DNA of 64,000 bases, taken from assembly GCF_006345805.1 (NCBI RefSeq), contig NC_043002.1, positions 37,014,001 to 37,078,000 on the forward strand, in the 5' to 3' direction. The first letter of the stretch is position 1; the number at the start of each line of letters is the position of its first letter. Position numbers and translations under genes: made by a program. Shown one piece after another: positions 7,372-55,290 of the stretch. The notes under the pieces were generated by a model. It saw nothing but the letters and a program-made list of their open reading frames with translations. It did no database searches and was not told the DNA's origin. This DNA is from Octopus sinensis. Lineage: Eukaryota.

Positions 7372-7522
7372 ATATATATACATTAATATCTTGCTATGGC
7401 ATTGCAATACAAATAACTTGGAGTAGAACTAAATGCACATATGCTTCAGAATAGGCGAGTACAGAACGGTAATAAGAAATTAAGATGACATTAGAATAAA
7501 CAATTATCTTATGAACTTCATT

Positions 7523-7603
7523 GGCTTACAGCTGTTTCTGCAATGAGATGCAGTTGACTCATAGCTGAGTGTCTAAGTATCACCTTATAGCTTCATCAGA
7601 GCT
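7523..7603 (-). ncRNA. Hammerhead-like motif in a fold-back element
   Basis: Minus strand: AGCT CTGATGA A GCTATAAG...CTCATTGC A GAAA CAGCTG TA AGCC; palindrome ACAGCTGT; GUA; stem II partly decayed. Confidence 0.5.
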
Positions 7604-7727
7604 TTAAGCATTGAGTCCGCTGCATCTTATAGCAGAAATTGATGTAAGCTAATGAAGTTCACAAGATAGTTGTTTATTCCTTTGTCATTTCAATTTCTTA
7701 TATATATGTATATGTATATATATATAA

Positions 7728-8463: not shown

Positions 8464-10440
8464 AATCCTTGTGGCTTAGTCGTTTAGCAAAGGTTTAGAG
8501 TAAGTACCAGGCTTTATGAAAATAATAAGTAGTAGGGCAATTTTTTGGCTAAACTCTTCAAGACAGTGCCTCAACATAGTCACAGACTAATGACAGTAAC
8601 AAATAAAAGTTAAAAGGTACCAGATATATAAAAAATTGTGATGAGATATTGTTCCATTTGTTCTGTCCCTAAAGTGGCTGAATTCCTTTTGAGCATTGGG
8701 CCTCACAAAGGCAATGACAAAGATCTTTGGCATTATGTCATGCTTGAGAAGAAGACCCATCAAGTCAAGCAAAATTGCAGTCATGGCAGATACTGGTGTC
8801 ACATAAACTGGCACCTGTGCCAGTGGTACATAAATTGCACCCCAGTGTCACACAAAGAGCCACCGTGCAGGTAGCACATAAAAGCACCCATTATACTCTC
8901 AGTGCAGTTGGCATTAGGAAGGGCATCCAGCTGTAGAAAACCATGCCAAATCTGACTGGTGTCTAGTGCAGCCTTCCAGCATGCCAGCCCAGTCAAACCA
9001 TTTGACCTAGCATGGACAAAGGACATTAAATGATGATGATGATGATTTTGATGATGATAATGTGGAATTACATCAGAGAATGAAATACAGTTGGTGAAAT
9101 ATTAAATATTTTCTCATTTCATGATATACTTTTTGTATACATTTTGTATTGACTCTTGATAATGCTGACAACTTCTTAATTTATTTCTAGGAATTCTATT
9201 TAGTTTGCATTGTTGCTAAGTCTTATATTTTTAAGTCATAATAGTCACTGCTTGCCCCTGCCCACCCACTTTCTTGTTAGTATTAGGGCCAGGTCTCTGA
9301 TTTGAGGCTGTCTTCCTCAACTAGTTTCGAAGGCCCTGGGAAAAGATTAAGGAGCCATAGACACTGATTTACTCTCTCAGACTAAATGGCAAAAAGGAAA
9401 GTAACGTAGCTTAGTAGCTTTTCTCTCCTGTTGCTGTTGTTATTGTTATTGCTGTGTGTGTGTGTGTGTGTGTGTGTGTTGTGTGTTGTGTGTGTGTGTG
9501 TGTGAGAGACAGAAAGAGAGATAGCAATGAAAAGTGACAAATGATTAGAGACTATGCTGAGACACACCCAATATGAAAAAGAAGGATGCCAGTTGATCAT
9601 GATGAAGACAACCATGATGATGAGGCTGTTGAGGATAATGTAATGTTTTATATTATTGTTAACTTATTTAGATTGTTGCAAACTACTGAACCTGAAGTGG
9701 CAGGAGCTGTGTGGGTTACACTGCATGTTAGTTTCATTGTGTGCCTATTGTCAGAATGTGTGACGAATGTGTGATGAAGTGTATTATTTTGAATAGTTTA
9801 AACATTTTTGCAACTTGTAACAAATGAAATCAAGAGCTGAACTGGAATGGAAGCACTGTTTGAAAACTTGCATCAGATTATCTTTATTTGATTAAATGAT
9901 AAATGAAGTGCTGATGAGAATTCTGAGTGCTAAATCATTTCCATTAATTGGGATAATGATACTTTGCTATGGAGGAGAGAATGTCAAATTAAATAAGCCA
10001 GTATTTTACATCCAGTTTCTTGTCAATAGTCCTTGGTCATGTATTTATGGTAACATGACTAGTGCTGGTGCTATGAAAAAAGTACTCTGTATATGTTTGG
10101 AAATTAGGAAGAACATCCAGTCATAGAAACTATGCCAAAACAGACATAGGAGCATGGTGCAGTTGTCAGGCTCATCAGATTCTACCCAACTGTCCAGCCT
10201 GTGTCAGAAGGAAAGATGGACATTAAAAGCTGATGATGAACAATTCTTGGGTTAAATGTTTAACTGAATGATAAATGTAAAAGATTTTTTCCCTTTGAAT
10301 TTAAACTGAATGCTTCTTTCTTGATCTGATTTTCAGAAAATTGCATTTATTTATTGATATTATTTTGATATACAGAGTAAAAACTTAATAGTACATAAAA
10401 AACACTGTGGGACAAGAATGGAAAAAAAAAGCACTCTTAC

Positions 10441-10592
10441 CTTAATACTACAATAAATCCGTCAAATAAATTGAACCCGTCACTAATATATCCAAAAAGA
10501 CCATATGCTGCAACTTTGAGCAGCATCTCAACAGCAAAAAGAAAACTGAAGACTATATTGCTGTATTCTAATGCTTGTGTCAATTCTTCTGG
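10441..10592 (-). CDS. Cav3: Cav3 coding exon, domain II S2-S3 (152 nt, phase 0-2): [50 protein letters not shown](S)
   Basis: Acceptor ttttatttgcag|CCAGAA, donor TTAAG|gtaaga. The peptide matches the Cav3 pattern [41 protein letters not shown].IVVIS. Confidence 0.96.
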
Positions 10593-11239
10593 CTGCAAAT
10601 AAAATATGAAAAGTGAGAAATAAATAACAAAAATGTAAAAGTGTATTGTGTATGTTTTATGAAAGGATAGAATCTTTGTCACATCAAAAATTAAATAATT
10701 AACAAAATTACCATTACATCAAATGAAATTACAAGTATTTCATCATAAATTAATGGATAAAGAAATCTATATTTATTTGGCACGTTCAAAATTTGCTTTA
10801 TGTAAAGATCAATAAAAAGAGATTTGTACAATTTTATGAGGACATCGTTTTATAGAAAATGTGTAGATTTTATGTTGTATTGACTCTAAGACCTCAGTGC
10901 AGAATAAAGAAAGTTTGTATAGATTGGAAGGGAATAAAATACAGGTGAATGTATAATGAGAATTTAAGAAAATTTGGTTAAAGAAACTGATGCAAATTAA
11001 AAGTATTGCTTCTCCTCAAAAATGAAAGGTGCTGATAACTGAGGTATTGAAACTATCCAGATATGTAAGTCATGTGCTATTTAATAATATTATTAACCAT
11101 GTTGTTATTATTGTGCTATCATTAATAACTGGCAGAACAGTGTCATTGTTAATAACTACAAGAGTAACAAAGATTAACTGGACAGATACAATTATAAATA
11201 TATCAAACTGTTGTAATATGATATGAAAGTGTCTGAGAT

Positions 11240-40315: not shown

Positions 40316-41892
40316 CATAGAAAAAGGAAAGGTCTAAGGGAAGATGGAAAACGAAAATCGCCAACGATACACAAGTGGTCTCACACACACACACACATAT
40401 ATGTATACACACATGAACATTTGTGTCCTACACTTCTCTATGGAAAACACCAATATCTGCTAAAAAGCACTATCTGAAAATACTACTACAAAAAAATAGT
40501 AAGTTCTATCAAAAGATTCAGATGGAAAAATTTACCATTACAAAAAAGACCAAATGGAAAACCAGCCTTCAACAACAGTTAAATGTCCACCTTCCATAGC
40601 TACAACTCTTCAAAGATGACCTATGTAGAATGATCGAGCAAATAAAACTCAACAAGTGAGCCAACAAACTGCAGAAAGAGTTGAAGCAGAAAATCAACTG
40701 AATAAAAACAAACCTGAATTTGTAAAATTGGATGAGACAAGCAACCTCTACCAGATAAGTCATCCTACTTATAACTGCTTTCTTTCTAACACAATATCTA
40801 ACATATACAAAAACATGAAATATGCAACTTTAAATGATATAAACACCACAGCCAAAGAAATAGCCACTAAATTAGGATAAATGATAAAGTAGACACATTA
40901 ACACCACAATCCTCAAATATAACCATGAAAGACCACAAGCCAAACATCAAAAGCAACCCATCTGTCAGACTTATAAATCCTTTGAAACCAGACAAAAAAA
41001 AAAAGATCATAGACAAATTTTCACCAAAAACTAAGAACAATATTGTCTGGAGTAACACATATGAAGTAATAGATTGGTTCAATAAGATTCTAAACAAAAA
41101 TGAATGCCATTTCTTCCAGTTTGACATCAGAGATTATTACATGTCAATATCAAATTTTTTTCTTATAGCTGCTTTGAACTTCACTAAAGCTGTAACCACA
41201 GTAAATGACACCAACATAGAAACAATATTACAAACAAGGAAATAACTCCTCTCCCATAACAATTCTTTCTGGATTACAAAAAACACTAAAGGATCATCTG
41301 ATCTAAGCATGGCATCAAAGGACTTGGCAGAGGTAAGTGACTCTGAACTAGTCTCTTCATGCCAGCATAAAATCTTAAAAACATTAAAACATTTCAAATC
41401 AATAATTTTTACTAATGGCTAAACATCTCACCAGCTTCTCTCCTTCCACCTGCACCATAAACTATCCCCATAACATGCATAACAAACACTTTTACAGCTT
41501 CATACTAAACAAGTACAGTAGAAATTATCTAGAAGTTTCCCTGTCCCCAACTAAAATCTCCACAAAATATTTTCCAATAGAAGTGCACAAATCTACATGC
41601 ACACACATAAATATATATTTGTAAGTAAGCAAGTTGGAAAACACTTTTCTTTTTAATTCATCATTTTAACTAAATATCTAAAAAAATTTAAATCAAGTTT
41701 TAAAATTAAATTTTATTTTTATTCTCATTTATATATATGAGTATATACAGTTTTTTATAATGCTCCACTTTTACATATATCCATAGGCCTAAAATAATAC
41801 ATCTTAAAATACTCACTTTTAAAACAGAATTGAAGAGCATTATTCACATTATTTACAATTGATGGATATTTGTCCTCAACTTGTTTGTTGTT

Positions 41893-42213: not shown

Positions 42214-42247
<34 letters not shown>

Positions 42248-42299
42248 CAACATCGAAAATTACCTTAGGAATGAGAACCCAGGTTTGAAATTTCCCCAG

Positions 42300-42345
42300 G
42301 ACACCTGATGAAGGCTGGAGGGTATATCAGCTGAAACGTTGTGTT
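42300..42345 (+). ncRNA. Minimal type I hammerhead-like motif (right arm of fold-back element)
   Basis: GACAC CTGATGA A GGCTG GAGGGTATAT CAGCT GAAA C GTT GTGTT; stem III is the palindrome AACGTT; GUU triplet. Confidence 0.65.
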
Positions 42346-43074
42346 AACAACAAACAAGATGAGGACAAATATCTGTCAATTGTAAATAATGTAAATAATG
42401 TACATAATTCCTCATCTCTTAAATATAGAACAGAATTGAAGAAATATCTACTTTGCCCACAAACTCTGCCTCCACAAAACGCAGAGGTTAAAATTTCTGT
42501 ATATTAATCAAATTACTTATCGAACAATGAACCCCTAGAGGGAAACATACAGACTAACAACCTTTACACTTAACCACATCTTGTGAATATCAAAGCACAA
42601 GATAAACAAATTTCTATACAAACAATACCAAAACATGTCTGACTGATAATTCCAGCCTTCCAAAAACAAACAGAAAGTACCGTAAATCACAAAAGCAAAT
42701 AAAGGAACTGACCAGCTAAAAAGGGCCATCTTTTGTTGTGAACCCTAAAAAAATTCCATAACAAAAAAGTAAATACACCCAATTACTAAGTTTTTAAATA
42801 CTGGTCTAAAATTTGAAGCTTTGACATTTAATTTGCCAAAGCTAACGATTAAATTCTATTAAACCAAAAGTAATTAAAACTACTGGCACATCCTTTTTGT
42901 GAACCACTAAAACACAATCCCATGATCCGAAGGGGAGAAACCTAGATATACACAGCTGCTTACAACTTTCTACATACATGAATAAATTTTAAGCAATAAC
43001 ATAATCCCAAATTTAATCAGTAGAATTTCTCCAGAACACCTCTCCATCATAACTCACCCAACAACCTAATTACC

Positions 43075-44236: not shown

Positions 44237-44337
44237 AATGGTAAAAGGAACAAAACACAGAAGTATGACAACAAAGGAAAATGGCATAAAGAATGGAAAA
44301 GCCAAACATTAAAAAATATCTACATCTAAAGATGTAC

Positions 44338-44459
44338 CTGGTTATGATATTCAATTCCCATGCTAAGAGTATTAATTAAGATGGCAAGTAGTATTCCTCG
44401 CTGGAATATTTTGCTTTCCACTGCCTTCTTCAAGTATCCTTGTGATTTTGTTAAAATTT
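44338..44459 (-). CDS. Cav3: Cav3 coding exon, domain II S1 (122 nt, phase 1-0): (E)[40 protein letters not shown]
   Basis: Absent from the ORF track; found by reverse-translating the expected motif. Acceptor tttttcag|AAATT, donor AACCAG|gtacat. The peptide matches the Cav3 pattern [29 protein letters not shown]. Confidence 0.95.
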
Positions 44460-50253: not shown

Positions 50254-50659
50254 TGTATGTATGTATGTATGTATGTACGTACGTACATATACTCTTTTAC
50301 TTGTTTCAGTCATTTGACTGTGGCCATGCTGGAGCACTGGCTTTAGTTGAGCAAATCAACCCCAGGACTTGTCGGCCTGAGATTATAATAGAAGACTTGC
50401 CCAAGGTGCCACACAGTGGGAATGAACCTGGAACCATGTGGTTGGTAAGCAAGCTATTTACCACACATCAACTCCTGTATGTATGTGCAGATTATTATGT
50501 TTATGTATGTATTCTCATGCACAGAGTTACATATCTAGGATATGCTCATATATAATTAAATGATAAACTTCTGGTAATTTTTACAGATTTTTAGTTAGTG
50601 ATGTATGTATGTATGTATGTATGTATGTATGATGTTATCAGGTCATTCCTTTTTGGTTA

Positions 50660-50830
50660 TTGTTTGTGTGTGATTCTGGGCAGTGCTATTTCTGTGTATT
50701 CTATTAATGCTGGTGTTTCTCAAGGCTCTATTCTTGGTCCACTTCTCTTTCTACTCTACACCAATGATCTTCCTGCCAATGTTCTTCAATTCATCAACGT
50801 TTATGCTGATAATTCTACTCTTTATTCTGG
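50660..50830 (+). mobile_element. CR1/L2-like LINE RT fragment
   Basis: GVSQGSILGPLLFLLYTNDLP...VYADNSTL (RT motifs with decayed YADD). Confidence 0.85.
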
Positions 50831-51654
50831 TGCCCTTCATTCTCAATCTTCAGTGAAATCATGTCTGGTCATGGGGAAATATTACATTACTTGGAAACAA
50901 GTAAGGATTGGCAACAGGAAGGACACCAGTGGAATTTGAACTCAGAATGTAAAGACAGATGAAACATTATACTTTTGGAGTGGTTGGCATTAGGAAGGGC
51001 ATCCAGTAGTAGAAACGATGCCAAAACAGACTGGGGTCTGGTGCAACCTTCCAGCTTGCCAGCCCTGGTCAAAGCGTCCAACCCATGCCAGCATGGACAA
51101 TGGTCGTTAAATTATGATGATGATGATGGCGATGATGATGATATGTATGTAAATTTCTGGGTAACACTTAGAAAAATCTCTGTTACAAACCATAACCTGA
51201 ATGTGGTCTGTTTGCGACATAAATTCTTATACAAGCCTGACTTCTGGCAACTTAACCTTACATATTTGCATGACTGGACTCAAACAATAACTTATAAGCA
51301 AATTAAATTCTTTCACATCCAATCAGTTAGCAGCTGCTCTCAAGTTTATTTAGCCAAACCAGAAGAATTGCCTCTACTATTACTTCCTTCTCAACCAAAC
51401 CTTATAAACATTTACTTTTTTCTTCTCCTATTCCTATAAAAAATTCTTCTACTGTTTCCTTAGAGATTTATATTACATCTAATTGTCATATACATAGCTC
51501 CACTACTGCCTAATAAGGACCCCAACTTCACCTTCCAAAAGCTATATATAAAGTTCGAAATCTTAGTGAGATTTAGTCAAAGCTTTAAAGCTACTGTTGA
51601 TCTTTTTGTAAAAATATGTGTACATATATTCATAGACATACACACACACATATA

Positions 51655-52920: not shown

Positions 52921-53322
52921 ATTGGTTTGTCAAAAGGTATGTAAATTGAAGCAATATACATACATACATACATATATATATATATTTATTTATATATACG
53001 TGTGCATGTGTATGTACACATGCATATACATTCAAATTAATTTGTTAAATTAATGATTAGTTTCGGTTCCTTCTCTTTAAAAGTACTACAGAACTAGACC
53101 TGAAATAGTCATTAATTTAATATAAGAAAATATTTTCACTTTACTTTATATGTCTAGTACTTTTACTTTTGGCTGCAGTTCTTTACGTTGGAAACAGAAA
53201 TATAGCAATCACTCATATATATATACATACAAACCTATATATATATAAACGTATACTACAAATCTCTCTCTCCCTTTCTCTTTCACTCTCTCTATTACAT
53301 ATATACACGTATATCTACATAT

Positions 53323-53404
<82 letters not shown>

Positions 53405-53413
53405 AATATATAT

Positions 53414-54083
53414 ATATAACAATTTAGGAGTGACCTTAACAGGCCATTCATCCACCAGAAAGAGCAGCCATAACTCACACTGCCAAGTAGTAGTAATTCA
53501 GAAATTAGGTGAAAATTTAAAAACATTTACCCTAATTCATCTTTTAGACGATGCATCGTTTCTGTGTTATTAATGATTAAATTAGCTTAATTAAATTAAA
53601 TTAAGCTAATCTACCATAGGTCACACTTCATCAGTAAAAAACCTGGGAGAGACAAATATACACGAGGCGTCTGTATCGATGCCTTCCGGAATATCTCTCT
53701 TAAAATTTTCAAGACTGACGTATTCGCGCCAAACTTATCAGCAGTAAATATAAACTGCCGATTCAATCTCAGAATTATTCAGAAAATTATCAATTAGTCA
53801 ATTTAGGGTAGCAAAAAATTCAATAGAAATTTATCGCTACCAGCGGCCTAGTGGAAAAGAGAAAATAGTCAAAGACTAAATATATAAATATAACAATTTA
53901 GGAGTGACCTTAACAGGCCATTCGTCCACCAGAAAGTGCTCTTTCTGGTGGACGAATGGCCTGTTAAGGTCACTCCTAAATTGTTATATTTAATATTTAG
54001 TCTTTGACTATTTTCTCTTTTCCACTAGGCCGCTGGTAGCGATAAATTTCTATTGAATTTTTTGCTACCCTAAATTGACTAAT
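53414..54083 (-). mobile_element. Penelope-type terminal structure (direct repeat, hammerhead, inverted copy) inserted in (TA)n
   Basis: 53414-53462 repeats 53890-53936; 53793-53936 is inverted at 53941-54083; hammerhead at 53541-53639; (TA)n on both sides. Confidence 0.65.
53541..53639 (-). ncRNA. Type I hammerhead ribozyme candidate with canonical core, on the Cav3 pre-mRNA strand
   Basis: Minus strand reads TTTTA CTGATGA A GTGT...(12-bp hairpin ATTAGCTTAATT/AATTAAGCTAAT)...ACAC A GAAA CGATGCATCG TC TAAAA: stem I TTTTA/TAAAA, palindromic stem III, GUC triplet. Confidence 0.75.
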
Positions 54084-54097
54084 ATAAATATATATAT

Positions 54098-54140
<43 letters not shown>

Positions 54141-54187
54141 CTCTCTCTCTCCCTTTCAGTTTCACTCTCTATATATACATATATAGA

Positions 54188-54223
<36 letters not shown>

Positions 54224-54246
54224 CTATATATCTATATATCTATCTA

Positions 54247-54321
<75 letters not shown>

Positions 54322-55077
54322 ATATATACGCATATATATATATATATTTATACACACATGCACACATGTATCCATCTTAATTTGTAATAATGATTTTCGA
54401 CATAAGTACATGGTCACAAATTTTAGGGGACGGTATAGTCAATCTAATTAACTTCAGTACTTGACTGCCAGAGTCAACCACACAAATTCATTTTAGAACA
54501 TAAAATAACTTACCTAAATACTGATGGCATTTAGTCTAGCAGCACTACCAATTTAGCTATAGCCAACTCAGTTTTAATGCAGGCACACAGTCACTGGTAC
54601 ACAGTAGGGAAAAGTAGATAGTCGACGAATTTGAACTTGATTGTAAGTAGTGTTACTACTCTGAGTAATGATAGCCCTGAGCTATCAGAATTATTAAAGC
54701 ATTTGGGAAAGTACTTTGCAGTTCTTGATTAGGTTCTTCTTTACATTCTAAGTTCAAATTCCACTTGAGTCAACTTTGCATTTCATCCCTCCAGGGGTCA
54801 ATTAAGTACTGGGACTGATGGTTCTGCCTAGTCTCTTCTCAAATTTTTTGACCATGTGATCCTAAATTAGTAGTGGCAGCAGCTGCCCTCCTCCTCTTCC
54901 TCGCATCCTCCCCTCCCCCCTCCTCACCACCACCACCACTACCAAGAAGAAAGAAAAACAAAAGAAAAATACTCAAGACTTAACACTTTATTAAAGAATC
55001 TCAGTCTTGCGTGAAATATTCTTAATCAAGCTTAATAAATTAATTTTAGCAATACATTAAATAAAAGCTCCACTTAC

Positions 55078-55290
55078 CATTTTTCATGAATTTTGTCCAC
55101 TTGTTTGGTATAACTGTTTCTTCTCTCCACTCTCCTTCTATGTCACTTTCACCACTGTCTGTCACCTCTTGTTCAGAATGTGAGAAATGACTAAGATGTG
55201 CATCACATTCATTGTGAATGCATGTGAGCTGCGGTGCAGACAAGCGCTTTTCTCCCAAGATATCAACAAGGAGACTTTCAGCGAGGGCTC
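55078..55290 (-). CDS. Cav3: Cav3 T-type calcium channel coding exon, distal I-II linker (213 nt, phase 1-1): (G)ALAESLLVDILGEKRLSAPQLTCIHNECDAHLSHFSHSEQEVTDSGESDIEGEWREETVIPNKWTKFMKN(E)
   Basis: Acceptor ttttttag|GAGCC and donor AATG|gtaagt; open frame; phase joins the 44459 exon (G|AA = Glu); an acidic Ser/Asp/Glu cluster precedes IIS1 as in Cav3 linkers. Homology of this exon alone is not recognisable by eye. Confidence 0.75.

What the first reader, a model, noticed from the sequence alone, without database searches (positions are those of the whole stretch)
53541..53639. Canonical-core hammerhead on the Cav3 sense strand, 1.4 kb downstream of a linker exon
Seen: CTGATGA, GAAA and GUC are all intact; stem I is 5 bp; stem III is the 10-nt palindrome CGATGCATCG with unmutated CpGs; stem II is extended and capped by a 12-bp hairpin. 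An A.A juxtaposition at the base of stem II recurs in the unrelated 7523 copy. The surrounding element has near-identical inverted arms, so it is probably young. Inference: this is the copy most likely to be active; predicted scission is between 53546 and 53545, inside the intron following the 213-nt exon.
Basis: partly seen in the sequence, partly recalled or inferred. Interest (0 to 1): 0.85.

Follow-up and report, generated by a model that had tools for sequence, protein, structure and literature searches.

The report
Retroelement hammerhead motif in Cav3 intron
A complete hammerhead-ribozyme-like motif does sit on the sense strand of an intron of a cephalopod T-type calcium-channel gene, but it most likely belongs to a recently inserted small retroelement of a known kind; nothing shows that it cuts RNA or serves the gene.

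Summary
The motif is real. On the minus strand, 53642-53539 holds CUGAUGA, GAAA and GUC, an 8-bp helix I, a 4-bp helix II under a long hairpin, and a palindromic helix III. Two corrections: scission would fall at 53547|53546, and the near-identical inverted arms lie beside the motif, not around it. Chance gives about 0.005-0.007 such motifs per 64-kb window, far fewer if a palindromic helix III is required.

The motif sits in a 472-nt unit followed by 64 nt of a second unit. A 146-nt head-to-head inverted copy precedes it, and the whole block splits an (AT)n microsatellite. Unit CpG o/e is 0.99 against 0.30 for the window. This matches the published insertion architecture of Penelope-like elements and resembles animal retrozymes. 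The window also holds two textbook Penelope-type minimal hammerheads at 41.9 and 42.3 kb.

Against an active ribozyme: A.A replaces G10.1-C11.1, helix I is all A-U/G.U, no tandem partner exists, and no related copy could be retrieved. Rfam finds nothing, but it also misses the textbook pair.

Verdict: probably a new member of a known kind, a passenger in the intron. Self-cleavage and any effect on Cav3 splicing are untested.

The parts
53539..53642 (-). Whole hammerhead-like motif of type I topology: helix I open, helices II and III closed
   Evidence: only descriptor hit in the window; the constrained hammerhead fold is 2.0 kcal/mol above the MFE for the 108-nt stretch
53635..53642 (-). Helix I, 5' strand GUUUUUUA (positions 2.8-2.1)
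   Evidence: Pairs with 53546-53539 as 5 A-U, G.U, A-U, G.U
53628..53634 (-). Core C3-A9, CUGAUGA
   Evidence: Direct reading
53627..53627 (-). The A after A9. Either position 10.1 of an A.A mismatch with A53563, or the extra nucleotide between A9 and 10.1 that is typical of Penelope-type hammerheads
   Evidence: literature feature
53623..53626 (-). Helix II, 5' strand GUGU
   Evidence: Pairs with ACAC 53567-53564; forms in the MFE
53573..53617 (-). A/U-rich hairpin capping helix II: 19 bp with one bulge and one G.U, 12 of them perfect Watson-Crick, 6-nt loop
53563..53567 (-). Helix II, 3' strand ACAC (53567-53564), plus the unpaired A53563 lying between it and G12
53559..53562 (-). Core G12 A13 A14 and A15.1 (GAAA)
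53549..53558 (-). Helix III, the palindrome CGAUGCAUCG. As a monomer: 3 bp plus a UGCA loop. It could also form an intermolecular duplex in a dimer
   Evidence: palindromic helix III/loop 3 is described as a hallmark of metazoan type-I hammerheads
53547..53548 (-). U16.1 and C17; predicted scission 3' of C17, between 53547 and 53546
   Evidence: Hammerhead numbering applied
53539..53546 (-). Helix I, 3' strand UAAAAGAU (positions 1.1-1.8)
53467..53938 (-). One full 472-nt non-coding unit that carries the motif. GC 33.5%; CpG o/e 0.99; longest stop-free stretch in the six-frame translation about 65 aa (plus strand)
   Evidence: Folded as a circle: -120 kcal/mol, z = -5.8 against dinucleotide shuffles
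53403..53466 (-). Start of a second unit in tandem (repeat of 53939-53877, 95% identical), running into (AT)n
53939..54083 (+). Head-to-head inverted copy of the first 146 nt of the unit (145/147 identical), ending at (AT)n
53299..53418 (.). (AT)n microsatellite flanking the insertion on one side
54082..54352 (.). (AT)n microsatellite flanking the insertion on the other side
55078..55290 (-). 213-nt exon upstream of the intron that hosts the motif. Placing it in the Cav3 I-II linker is inferred from its position
   Evidence: Splice sites; conserved only over the exon in a cuttlefish read contig; no PDB match
44335..44442 (-). Next Cav3 exon (domain II S1). The host intron would therefore be about 10.6 kb if no exon lies between
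   Evidence: tblastn, 81% identity over 36 aa

Best explanation
The motif is the hammerhead of a small non-coding retroelement. The element resembles the non-autonomous derivatives of Penelope-like elements (PLEs) known as animal non-LTR retrozymes.

Shown:
- A 472-nt A/T-rich unit, followed by the first 64 nt of a second unit.
- A 146-nt head-to-head inverted copy in front of it.
- The whole block interrupts an (AT)n microsatellite.
- The block has kept its CpGs in a CpG-depleted intron, so it arrived recently.

Inferred:
- It was inserted by target-primed reverse transcription with a PLE-type enzyme that primes on both DNA strands. That would give the partial tandem and the inverted copy.
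- In the element's own life cycle the hammerhead would cut multimeric transcripts into unit lengths.

At this locus it is a lone copy that happens to lie in the sense orientation of a Cav3 intron, so it is transcribed as part of the pre-mRNA. All catalytic-core nucleotides are present, and helix III is stable enough for monomeric folding. However, the base of helix II is A.A instead of G-C, and helix I is weak. I therefore expect slow or negligible self-cleavage and no evolved role in Cav3 expression.
For: 1. The motif is complete and rare by chance: one hit in the window; 0/400 and 2/400 simulated windows; 0.007 expected per window by resampling. With a palindromic helix III required, the only solutions are the candidate's own.
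2. Several features were not required by the descriptor but are named in the literature as hallmarks of metazoan and PLE hammerheads. These are a palindromic helix III/loop 3, an extra nucleotide after A9, a short helix I, and N7=U with GUC.
3. The architecture matches the published PLE insertion pattern: a partial tandem forming a pseudo-LTR, an adjacent inverted copy, and a microsatellite target, with (TA)n named for one clade. See for the locus.
4. A PLE enzyme has been shown to cleave and extend both target strands.
5. Unit size, low GC and lack of coding capacity fit animal retrozymes: 150-450 bp, GC below 45-50% (unit data).
6. The unit folds far better than shuffles, z = -5.8.
7. Youth: unit CpG o/e 0.99 against 0.30 for the window, in the top 1.4% of 472-nt windows; arms 145/147 identical.
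8. This genome does carry PLE-type hammerheads. Two related minimal hammerheads lie on opposite strands at 42300-42345 and 41938-41893, and the differences between them preserve pairing.
9. A mismatch at the base of helix II has a precedent in a bona fide retrozyme hammerhead family: axolotl HHR_Amex2 has U.U there and cleaves weakly as a monomer.
10. The hammerhead fold is only 2 kcal/mol above the MFE.
Against: - No second copy of the unit or the motif was found anywhere. None is in the window. None was found in viral or metagenome contigs. None was found through ORF-based protein searches. Family membership, covariation and conservation of the core are therefore untested.
- No Rfam hammerhead model matches at E<=10.
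- G10.1-C11.1, reported as highly conserved even in minimal PLE hammerheads, is not adjacent to G12 here.
- Published PLE hammerheads lie in the pseudo-LTR. Here the duplicated part (64 nt) does not contain the motif.
- The element has only 1.13 units, whereas retrozymes are defined by tandem copies.
- The PLE clade reported to favour (TA)n targets (Naiad) lacks canonical hammerheads.
- The inverted junction (53938/53939) does not coincide with the predicted ribozyme cut.
Confidence: 0.6

Rival explanations
1. It is a chance look-alike. The insertion or duplication is real and young, but it is not a ribozyme-bearing element. A/T-rich sequence full of small palindromes happens to place CUGAUGA, GAAA and a palindrome in the right order.
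For: - About 0.005-0.007 relaxed-descriptor hits are expected per 64-kb window. That would amount to hundreds in a genome of a few Gb (genome size assumed from my own knowledge, not measured here).
- The strict descriptor, with 10.1-11.1 paired, finds nothing.
- Rfam gives no match.
- The descriptor was relaxed after seeing the candidate.
- Helix I is low-information A/U sequence.
- No related copy was found.
- The unit is generally rich in hairpins.
Against: - The extra hallmarks (perfect 10-nt palindromic helix III, GUC, N7=U, 8-bp helix I) lower the chance estimate by about three orders of magnitude or more.
- The motif sits in an insertion whose architecture is that of hammerhead-carrying retroelements.
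- The same window has genuine PLE-type hammerheads.
Confidence: 0.25
2. The motif is an efficient self-cleaving ribozyme that cuts nascent Cav3 pre-mRNA 1.4 kb after the 213-nt exon. By doing so it changes exon inclusion or transcript yield, perhaps as a presence/absence polymorphism.
For: - Sense orientation in the intron.
- Full catalytic core and a helix III stable as a monomer.
- An internal loop after exactly 4 bp of helix II could stand in for loop 2 (inference).
- Precedents exist for conserved intronic hammerheads in amniote genes (RECK, CTCL, DTNB) and for the intronic CPEB3 ribozyme, whose rate competes with splicing (abstract of PMC10919898).
Against: - No conservation evidence at all, and the insertion is young, so it cannot be an evolved regulator.
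- A.A at the helix II base, a weak helix I and no recognisable loop-loop contacts all predict low activity.
- PLE-type hammerheads tested in vitro showed no detectable activity as single motifs and only low activity as dimers or trimers.
- Intronic monomeric retrozyme copies are commonplace in frogs, about 43% of copies.
- From my own knowledge, intronic ribozyme cleavage need not block splicing (exon tethering: Dye, Gromak and Proudfoot, 2006).
Confidence: 0.07

Closest known systems
Minimal hammerheads of Penelope-like elements (Cervera and de la Pena 2014, PMC4209133; Craig et al. 2021, PMC8557442)
   Same: - Type I topology, with CUGAUGA followed by an extra nucleotide before helix II.
- Palindromic helix III region and a short helix I.
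- Carried by an insertion with a partial tandem and an adjacent inverted copy in a microsatellite.
- Copies are often single and truncated.
- The same window holds two clear members at 41.9 and 42.3 kb.
   Different: - The candidate has a real 4-bp helix III with a tetraloop, not a minimal one.
- An additional A lies between 11.1 and G12, so G10.1-C11.1 does not abut the core.
- Helix II is 4 bp plus a 45-nt hairpin, not 6-8 bp.
- The element has no RT/GIY-YIG ORF.
- The motif lies outside the duplicated 'pseudo-LTR' part.
- There is no sequence similarity to the window's own PLE-type units.
Animal non-LTR retrozymes with type I hammerheads (Cervera and de la Pena 2020, PMC7229834; Li et al. 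2026 preprint, 10.64898/2026.07.22.740005)
   Same: - Non-coding, A/T-rich unit of a few hundred nt with one type-I hammerhead.
- Tandem phase, and strong self-complementarity of the unit.
- A helix II base mismatch occurs in axolotl HHR_Amex2.
- Monomeric copies are scattered in genomes, including introns.
   Different: - Only 1.13 units are present here, so there is one ribozyme and no flanking pair that could release a circle.
- At 472 nt the unit is slightly above the quoted 150-450 bp.
- There are no recognisable loop 1-loop 2 contacts.
- Expression as circular RNA is unknown.
Conserved intronic hammerheads of amniotes (RECK, CTCL, DTNB; Rfam HH9/HH10; reviewed in PMC6155905)
   Same: A type I hammerhead on the sense strand of a large intron of a protein-coding gene, thought to derive from retroelements.
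   Different: Those are ultraconserved across classes and match the Rfam models. This one is a young insertion with no conservation evidence and no Rfam match.
CPEB3 intronic HDV-like ribozyme (PMC10919898)
   Same: An intronic self-cleaving motif whose cleavage could compete with splicing of the host pre-mRNA.
   Different: It is a different ribozyme class, it is conserved in mammals, and its activity has been demonstrated.

Membership tests
Hammerhead ribozyme (type I) | Conserved core nucleotides C3 U4 G5 A6 N7 G8 A9, G12 A13 A14, A15.1-U16.1, H17 | tested here: met
   CUGAUGA 53634-53628, GAAA 53562-53559, U53548, C53547
Hammerhead ribozyme (type I) | Three helices radiating from the core, with helix II starting at a 10.1-11.1 pair (normally G-C) | tested here: inconclusive
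   Helices I (8 bp) and III (4 bp) are fine. Helix II is 4 bp but is separated from the core by A.A. G10.1-C11.1 is reported as highly conserved. A U.U mismatch at this position exists in a genuine family.
Hammerhead ribozyme (type I) | Match to a curated covariance model (Rfam Hammerhead_1, HH9, HH10 and others) | tested here: not met
   No hit at the gathering score over the window, and none at E<=10 over 53300-53900. The test has low power here: the textbook PLE-type hammerheads at 41.9 and 42.3 kb are also missed.
Hammerhead ribozyme (type I) | Loop 1-loop 2 tertiary contacts, needed for fast cleavage at physiological Mg2+ | not testable with these tools
   No canonical loops are present. 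An internal loop follows bp 4 of helix II and helix I ends after 8 bp; whether these contact each other is unknown.
Hammerhead ribozyme (type I) | Site-specific self-cleavage 3' of H17 | not testable with these tools
   Needs in vitro transcription or mapping of RNA ends.
Hammerhead ribozyme (type I) | Conservation and covariation among related copies | tested here: inconclusive
   No related copy could be retrieved. The source genome is not searchable with these tools.
Penelope-like element insertion | RT plus GIY-YIG endonuclease ORF | tested here: not met
   The longest stop-free stretch in the six-frame translation is about 65 aa, and the ORFs have no homologues. At most it is a non-autonomous derivative.
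Penelope-like element insertion | Partial tandem forming a pseudo-LTR, plus an adjacent inverted copy | tested here: met
   53403-53466 repeats 53877-53939 (95%). 53939-54083 is the inverted copy of 53793-53938 (99%).
Penelope-like element insertion | Insertion bias for microsatellites | tested here: met
   (AT)n lies on both sides. The bias is reported, with (TA)n named for Naiads, a clade that lacks canonical hammerheads.
Penelope-like element insertion | Hammerhead located in the pseudo-LTR | tested here: not met
   The motif (53642-53539) lies 73 nt upstream of the duplicated segment, not inside it.
Animal non-LTR retrozyme | Tandem repeats (two or more copies) of a 150-450 bp unit, each with a type I hammerhead | tested here: not met
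   1.13 units of 472 nt with one hammerhead. Monomeric genomic copies of retrozyme families are known, but the family itself could not be identified.
Animal non-LTR retrozyme | Low GC and no coding capacity | tested here: met
   GC 33.5%; no ORF with homologues.
Animal non-LTR retrozyme | Expression as linear and circular RNA of unit length | not testable with these tools
   No transcript data were available.

The most novel reading that the evidence does not exclude
Cephalopod genomes may carry a so far undescribed hammerhead variant class. In it, a symmetric A.A (1x1) internal loop separates the catalytic core from helix II. It would be borne by young, possibly still mobile, retrozyme-like elements, and this copy would be active enough to cut Cav3 pre-mRNA in animals that carry the insertion. 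The recurrence of CUGAUGA-A-G...C-A-GAAA in two unrelated elements of one window (C3=53634 and C3=7599) is the hint.
Probability: 0.1. Interest if true: 0.6.

Novelty: new member of a known kind. Interest (0 to 1): 0.3.

Why it matters
If the unit proves to be a family with a conserved core, it would add cephalopods to the animals known to carry hammerhead-bearing retroelements. My full-text search found no paper describing an octopus or cephalopod hammerhead: five papers hold both terms and none is about this. It would also give a natural test of how much a mismatch at the base of helix II is tolerated.

A young sense-strand copy in an intron of a neuronal ion-channel gene would be a convenient natural experiment on whether intronic self-cleavage affects splicing. 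The neighbouring 146-bp perfect hairpin may matter more to the host RNA than the ribozyme motif does. As it stands, this is an ordinary consequence of retroelement insertion, not a regulatory device.

Tried and rejected
- Rfam at gathering score on the whole window and at E<=10 around the motif: no hammerhead family. I do not count this as strong negative evidence, because the same search misses the clear PLE-type hammerheads.
- Search for other copies. Self-BLAST of the unit found none beyond the locus. Exact-pattern scans of viral contigs and metagenome contigs found none. Protein-database searches with the element's stop-free translations found none. An exact ORF look-up was not on record.
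- Orthologous intron from relatives. The Logan contigs that carry the neighbouring exons are only 1.0-1.2 kb and stop short of the site.
- tRNA/SINE origin of the unit: no tRNA-like gene.
- The 213-nt exon against PDB sequences: no match. Its assignment to the I-II linker rests on position, splice sites and conservation.
- Pfam on nearby ORFs, to tie the 41.9/42.3-kb hammerheads to a PLE reverse transcriptase: nothing above threshold there. The only RVT_1 fragment is at 50598-50939.
- The idea that the head-to-head junction marks a ribozyme-generated RNA 5' end was rejected. The junction (53938/53939) lies 392 nt from the predicted cut.
- The '7523 copy' as a second good hammerhead was rejected: 3-bp helix I, interrupted helix II, fold z = 0.03.

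Full report
**1. What is in the sequence**

On the minus strand the stretch 53642-53539 reads:

GUUUUUUA-CUGAUGA-A-GUGU-[internal loop + hairpin]-ACAC-A-GAAA-CGAUGCAUCG-U-C-UAAAAGAU

In hammerhead numbering the parts are:
- C3-A9 = 53634-53628.
- G12-A14 = 53562-53560, and A15.1 = 53559.
- Helix III is the 10-nt palindrome 53558-53549.
- U16.1 = 53548 and C17 = 53547.
- Helix I pairs 53642-53635 with 53546-53539: five A-U pairs, then G.U, A-U, G.U.
- Helix II is GUGU/ACAC (53626-53623 with 53567-53564). It is set off from the core by A53627 opposite A53563.
- After an internal loop, helix II is capped by a hairpin at 53617-53573.

**2. Gene context**

- The ORF fragment at 10437-10682 (minus) matches T-type channels best: Cav3.2 and Cav3.1 at E about 3e-29, against 3e-18 for L-type channels.
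- The domain II S1 exon lies at about 44442-44335.
- The exon at 55290-55078 is exactly 213 nt, with a polypyrimidine-AG acceptor and a GTAAGT donor.
- An ORF 69% identical to this exon occurs in short-read assemblies. One of those runs is cited as golden cuttlefish reads.
- DNA similarity to that contig stops within the exon. The exon is therefore real, and the window is from a coleoid cephalopod.
- The motif lies 1.44 kb into the following intron, on the sense strand. That intron is about 10.6 kb if no exon intervenes.

**3. Is it more than chance?**

- A type-I descriptor was applied: CUGANGA; helix II of at least 4 bp with one mismatch allowed at its base; GAAA; helix III of at least 4 bp including A15.1-U16.1; UH; helix I of at least 5 bp. 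It finds only this site on either strand.
- Simulated windows gave 0/400 hits (order-1 Markov) and 2/400 hits (order-3 Markov).
- Exhaustive resampling of the real sequence gave 0.007 expected hits per window.
- That rate alone would still allow hundreds of accidents in a genome of a few Gb. The genome size is my assumption from general knowledge, not a measured value.
- When the whole helix III/loop 3 must be a perfect palindrome, the only solutions among 128,000 start positions are the candidate's own. The literature lists this feature as a hallmark of metazoan type-I and Penelope-type hammerheads.
- These criteria were chosen after seeing the candidate, so the numbers are indicative only.
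- The constrained hammerhead fold is 2.0 kcal/mol above the MFE for the 108-nt stretch, and helix II forms in the MFE itself.

**4. Rfam**

- No family reaches its gathering score anywhere in the window.
- No hammerhead model appears even at E<=10 around the motif.
- As a control, the same search misses two clear Penelope-type minimal hammerheads elsewhere in the window (see section 6). The negative result therefore says little.

**5. The surroundings**

Self-comparison and tandem-repeat finding give this layout on the minus strand:

(AT)n | inverted copy of unit positions 1-146 (54083-53939) | unit positions 1-472 (53938-53467, motif at unit positions about 297-400) | unit positions 1-64 again (53466-53403) | (AT)n

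- The inverted arms are 145/147 identical, and the direct repeat is 95% identical.
- The arms lie beside the motif, not around it.
- Both outer ends stop just after a CCTAAATTG motif.
- The unit has 33.5% GC and 13 CpGs. Its CpG o/e is 0.99, against 0.30 for the window and a median of 0.24 for 472-nt windows. That puts it in the top 1.4%.
- The unit has no ORF with homologues and no tRNA-like part.
- Folded as a circle it reaches -120 kcal/mol, against -92 +/- 5 for dinucleotide shuffles, z = -5.8.

This is a young insertion into a microsatellite. Partial tandems that form pseudo-LTRs, an adjacent inverted copy, and microsatellite targets are the published signature of Penelope-like element insertions. 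A PLE enzyme has been shown to cleave and extend both target strands. Animal non-LTR retrozymes are described as A/T-rich 150-450-bp units with one type-I hammerhead. They are proposed to be non-autonomous derivatives of PLE pseudo-LTRs.

**6. Hammerheads elsewhere in the window**

Listing every CUGANGA site revealed two related motifs on opposite strands:
- 42300-42345 (+): GACAC-CUGAUGA-A-GGCUGG...UCAGCU-GAAA-CG-UU-GUGUU
- 41938-41893 (-): the same motif, with pair-preserving differences in helix II (G.U to G-C, C-G to U.G) and a CpG-to-TpG change in the ACGU palindrome.

They lie in inverted arms that are 91% identical. They fit the published minimal PLE hammerhead point by point: an extra nucleotide after A9, G10.1 paired with 11.1, a 6-bp helix II, palindromic 15.2-16.2 and a 5-bp helix I. 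So this genome does carry such elements, again in head-to-head pairs.

The '7523' motif (C3 = 7599, minus strand) shares the CUGAUGA-A-G...C-A-GAAA arrangement. However, its helix I has only 3 bp, its helix II is interrupted and its helix III is a loopless palindrome. It also shows no fold signal, z = 0.03. It sits in an old 76%-identical palindrome at 7472-7701. It may be a decayed relative, or nothing at all.

**7. Will it cleave?**

For:
- The core is complete.
- Helix III has 4 bp and a tetraloop, which is more stable than the 1-2 bp typical of metazoan type-I motifs that need dimers.
- Helix II has the canonical 4 bp before a loop.

Against:
- The G10.1-C11.1 pair, reported as highly conserved, does not abut G12. 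The extra A after A9 is normal for PLE hammerheads, but the extra A before G12 is not.
- The closest precedent is the U.U mismatch of axolotl HHR_Amex2, which cleaves 22% in an hour as a monomer.
- Helix I is entirely A-U/G.U.
- There are no recognisable loop-loop contacts.
- There is no second copy nearby for dimer formation.
- PLE hammerheads tested in vitro showed no detectable activity as single motifs and only low activity as dimers or trimers.

I therefore expect weak or no cleavage. Only an assay can tell.

**8. Meaning for Cav3**

- Nothing links the motif to the 213-nt exon beyond proximity.
- The insertion is young, so it is not an evolved regulator.
- Monomeric retrozyme copies in introns are common in frogs, although somewhat depleted.
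- Conserved intronic hammerheads (RECK, CTCL, DTNB) and the CPEB3 ribozyme show that the idea is legitimate in principle. Those cases rest on deep conservation, which is absent here.
- In the pre-mRNA, the adjacent 146-bp near-perfect hairpin (53793-54083) is a stronger structural feature than the ribozyme motif.

**9. What could not be done**

- No other copy of the unit could be retrieved.
- Contigs from relatives are too short to reach the site.
- Family membership, covariation and the age of the insertion therefore remain open. These are the decisive next computations.

**10. Verdict**

- Most likely (0.6) this is the hammerhead of a young Penelope-derived, retrozyme-like insertion riding in a Cav3 intron.
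- A chance look-alike remains possible (0.25).
- A host-relevant active ribozyme is unlikely (0.07).
- It is a new member of a known kind, of modest interest.

Noticed in passing
window 42300-42345 (+) and 41938-41893 (-); arms 42240-42400 / 41998-41838: Two textbook Penelope-type minimal hammerheads lie on opposite strands, in inverted arms that are 91% identical. Each has CUGAUGA plus an extra A, a 6-bp helix II, GAAA-CG-UU (one copy has CpG>TpG) and a 5-bp helix I GACAC/GUGUU. The differences between the two copies preserve helix II pairing. Rfam does not detect them even at E<=10.
   Followed up: partly
It has the same CUGAUGA-A-G...C-A-GAAA arrangement and a loopless palindromic helix III (ACAGCUGU). 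Its helix I has only 3 bp and its helix II is interrupted. It lies in an old foldback whose arms are 76% identical. It fails the descriptor, and its fold z-score is 0.03.
   Followed up: partly
window 53793-54083: A 292-nt near-perfect palindrome (145/147) would form a roughly 146-bp double-stranded hairpin in the sense pre-mRNA of a neuronal channel gene. In a cephalopod this is an obvious candidate substrate for ADAR editing or Dicer (my inference, not tested).
   Followed up: no
window 53403-53420 and 54068-54083: Both outer ends of the insertion stop a few bases after the same CCTAAATTG motif, directly against (AT)n. This may mark two reverse-transcription start sites or microhomology with the target.
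   Followed up: no
window 53467-53938 versus the whole window: The unit has CpG o/e 0.99. The window has 0.30, and the median for 472-nt windows is 0.24. The older PLE-type arms at 41.8-42.4 kb have about 0.38. The window is strongly CpG-depleted, and the insertion has not yet decayed.
   Followed up: yes
window 44335-44442 (-), 10440-10646 (-), 55078-55290 (-): Three Cav3 exons were mapped on the minus strand: a 213-nt linker exon, domain II S1, and domain II S1-S3. The introns between them are about 10.6 kb and about 34 kb, so the window covers only part of the gene.
   Followed up: partly
L005 versus window 10374-11089; L001 versus window 55119-55285: A short-read contig from run SRR11869390 is 93% identical to the window across exon and intron, which suggests a sister species. 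Contigs carrying the linker-exon ORF align at 77% over the exon only; one of them is from ERR12945500, cited as golden cuttlefish reads.
   Followed up: partly
window 50598-50939 (+): A reverse-transcriptase fragment (Pfam RVT_1, E = 6e-7). ORFs at 40656-41245 with an RT-like 'FDIRDYYMSI' motif gave no significant Pfam hit. These are remnants of other retroelements in the introns.
   Followed up: no
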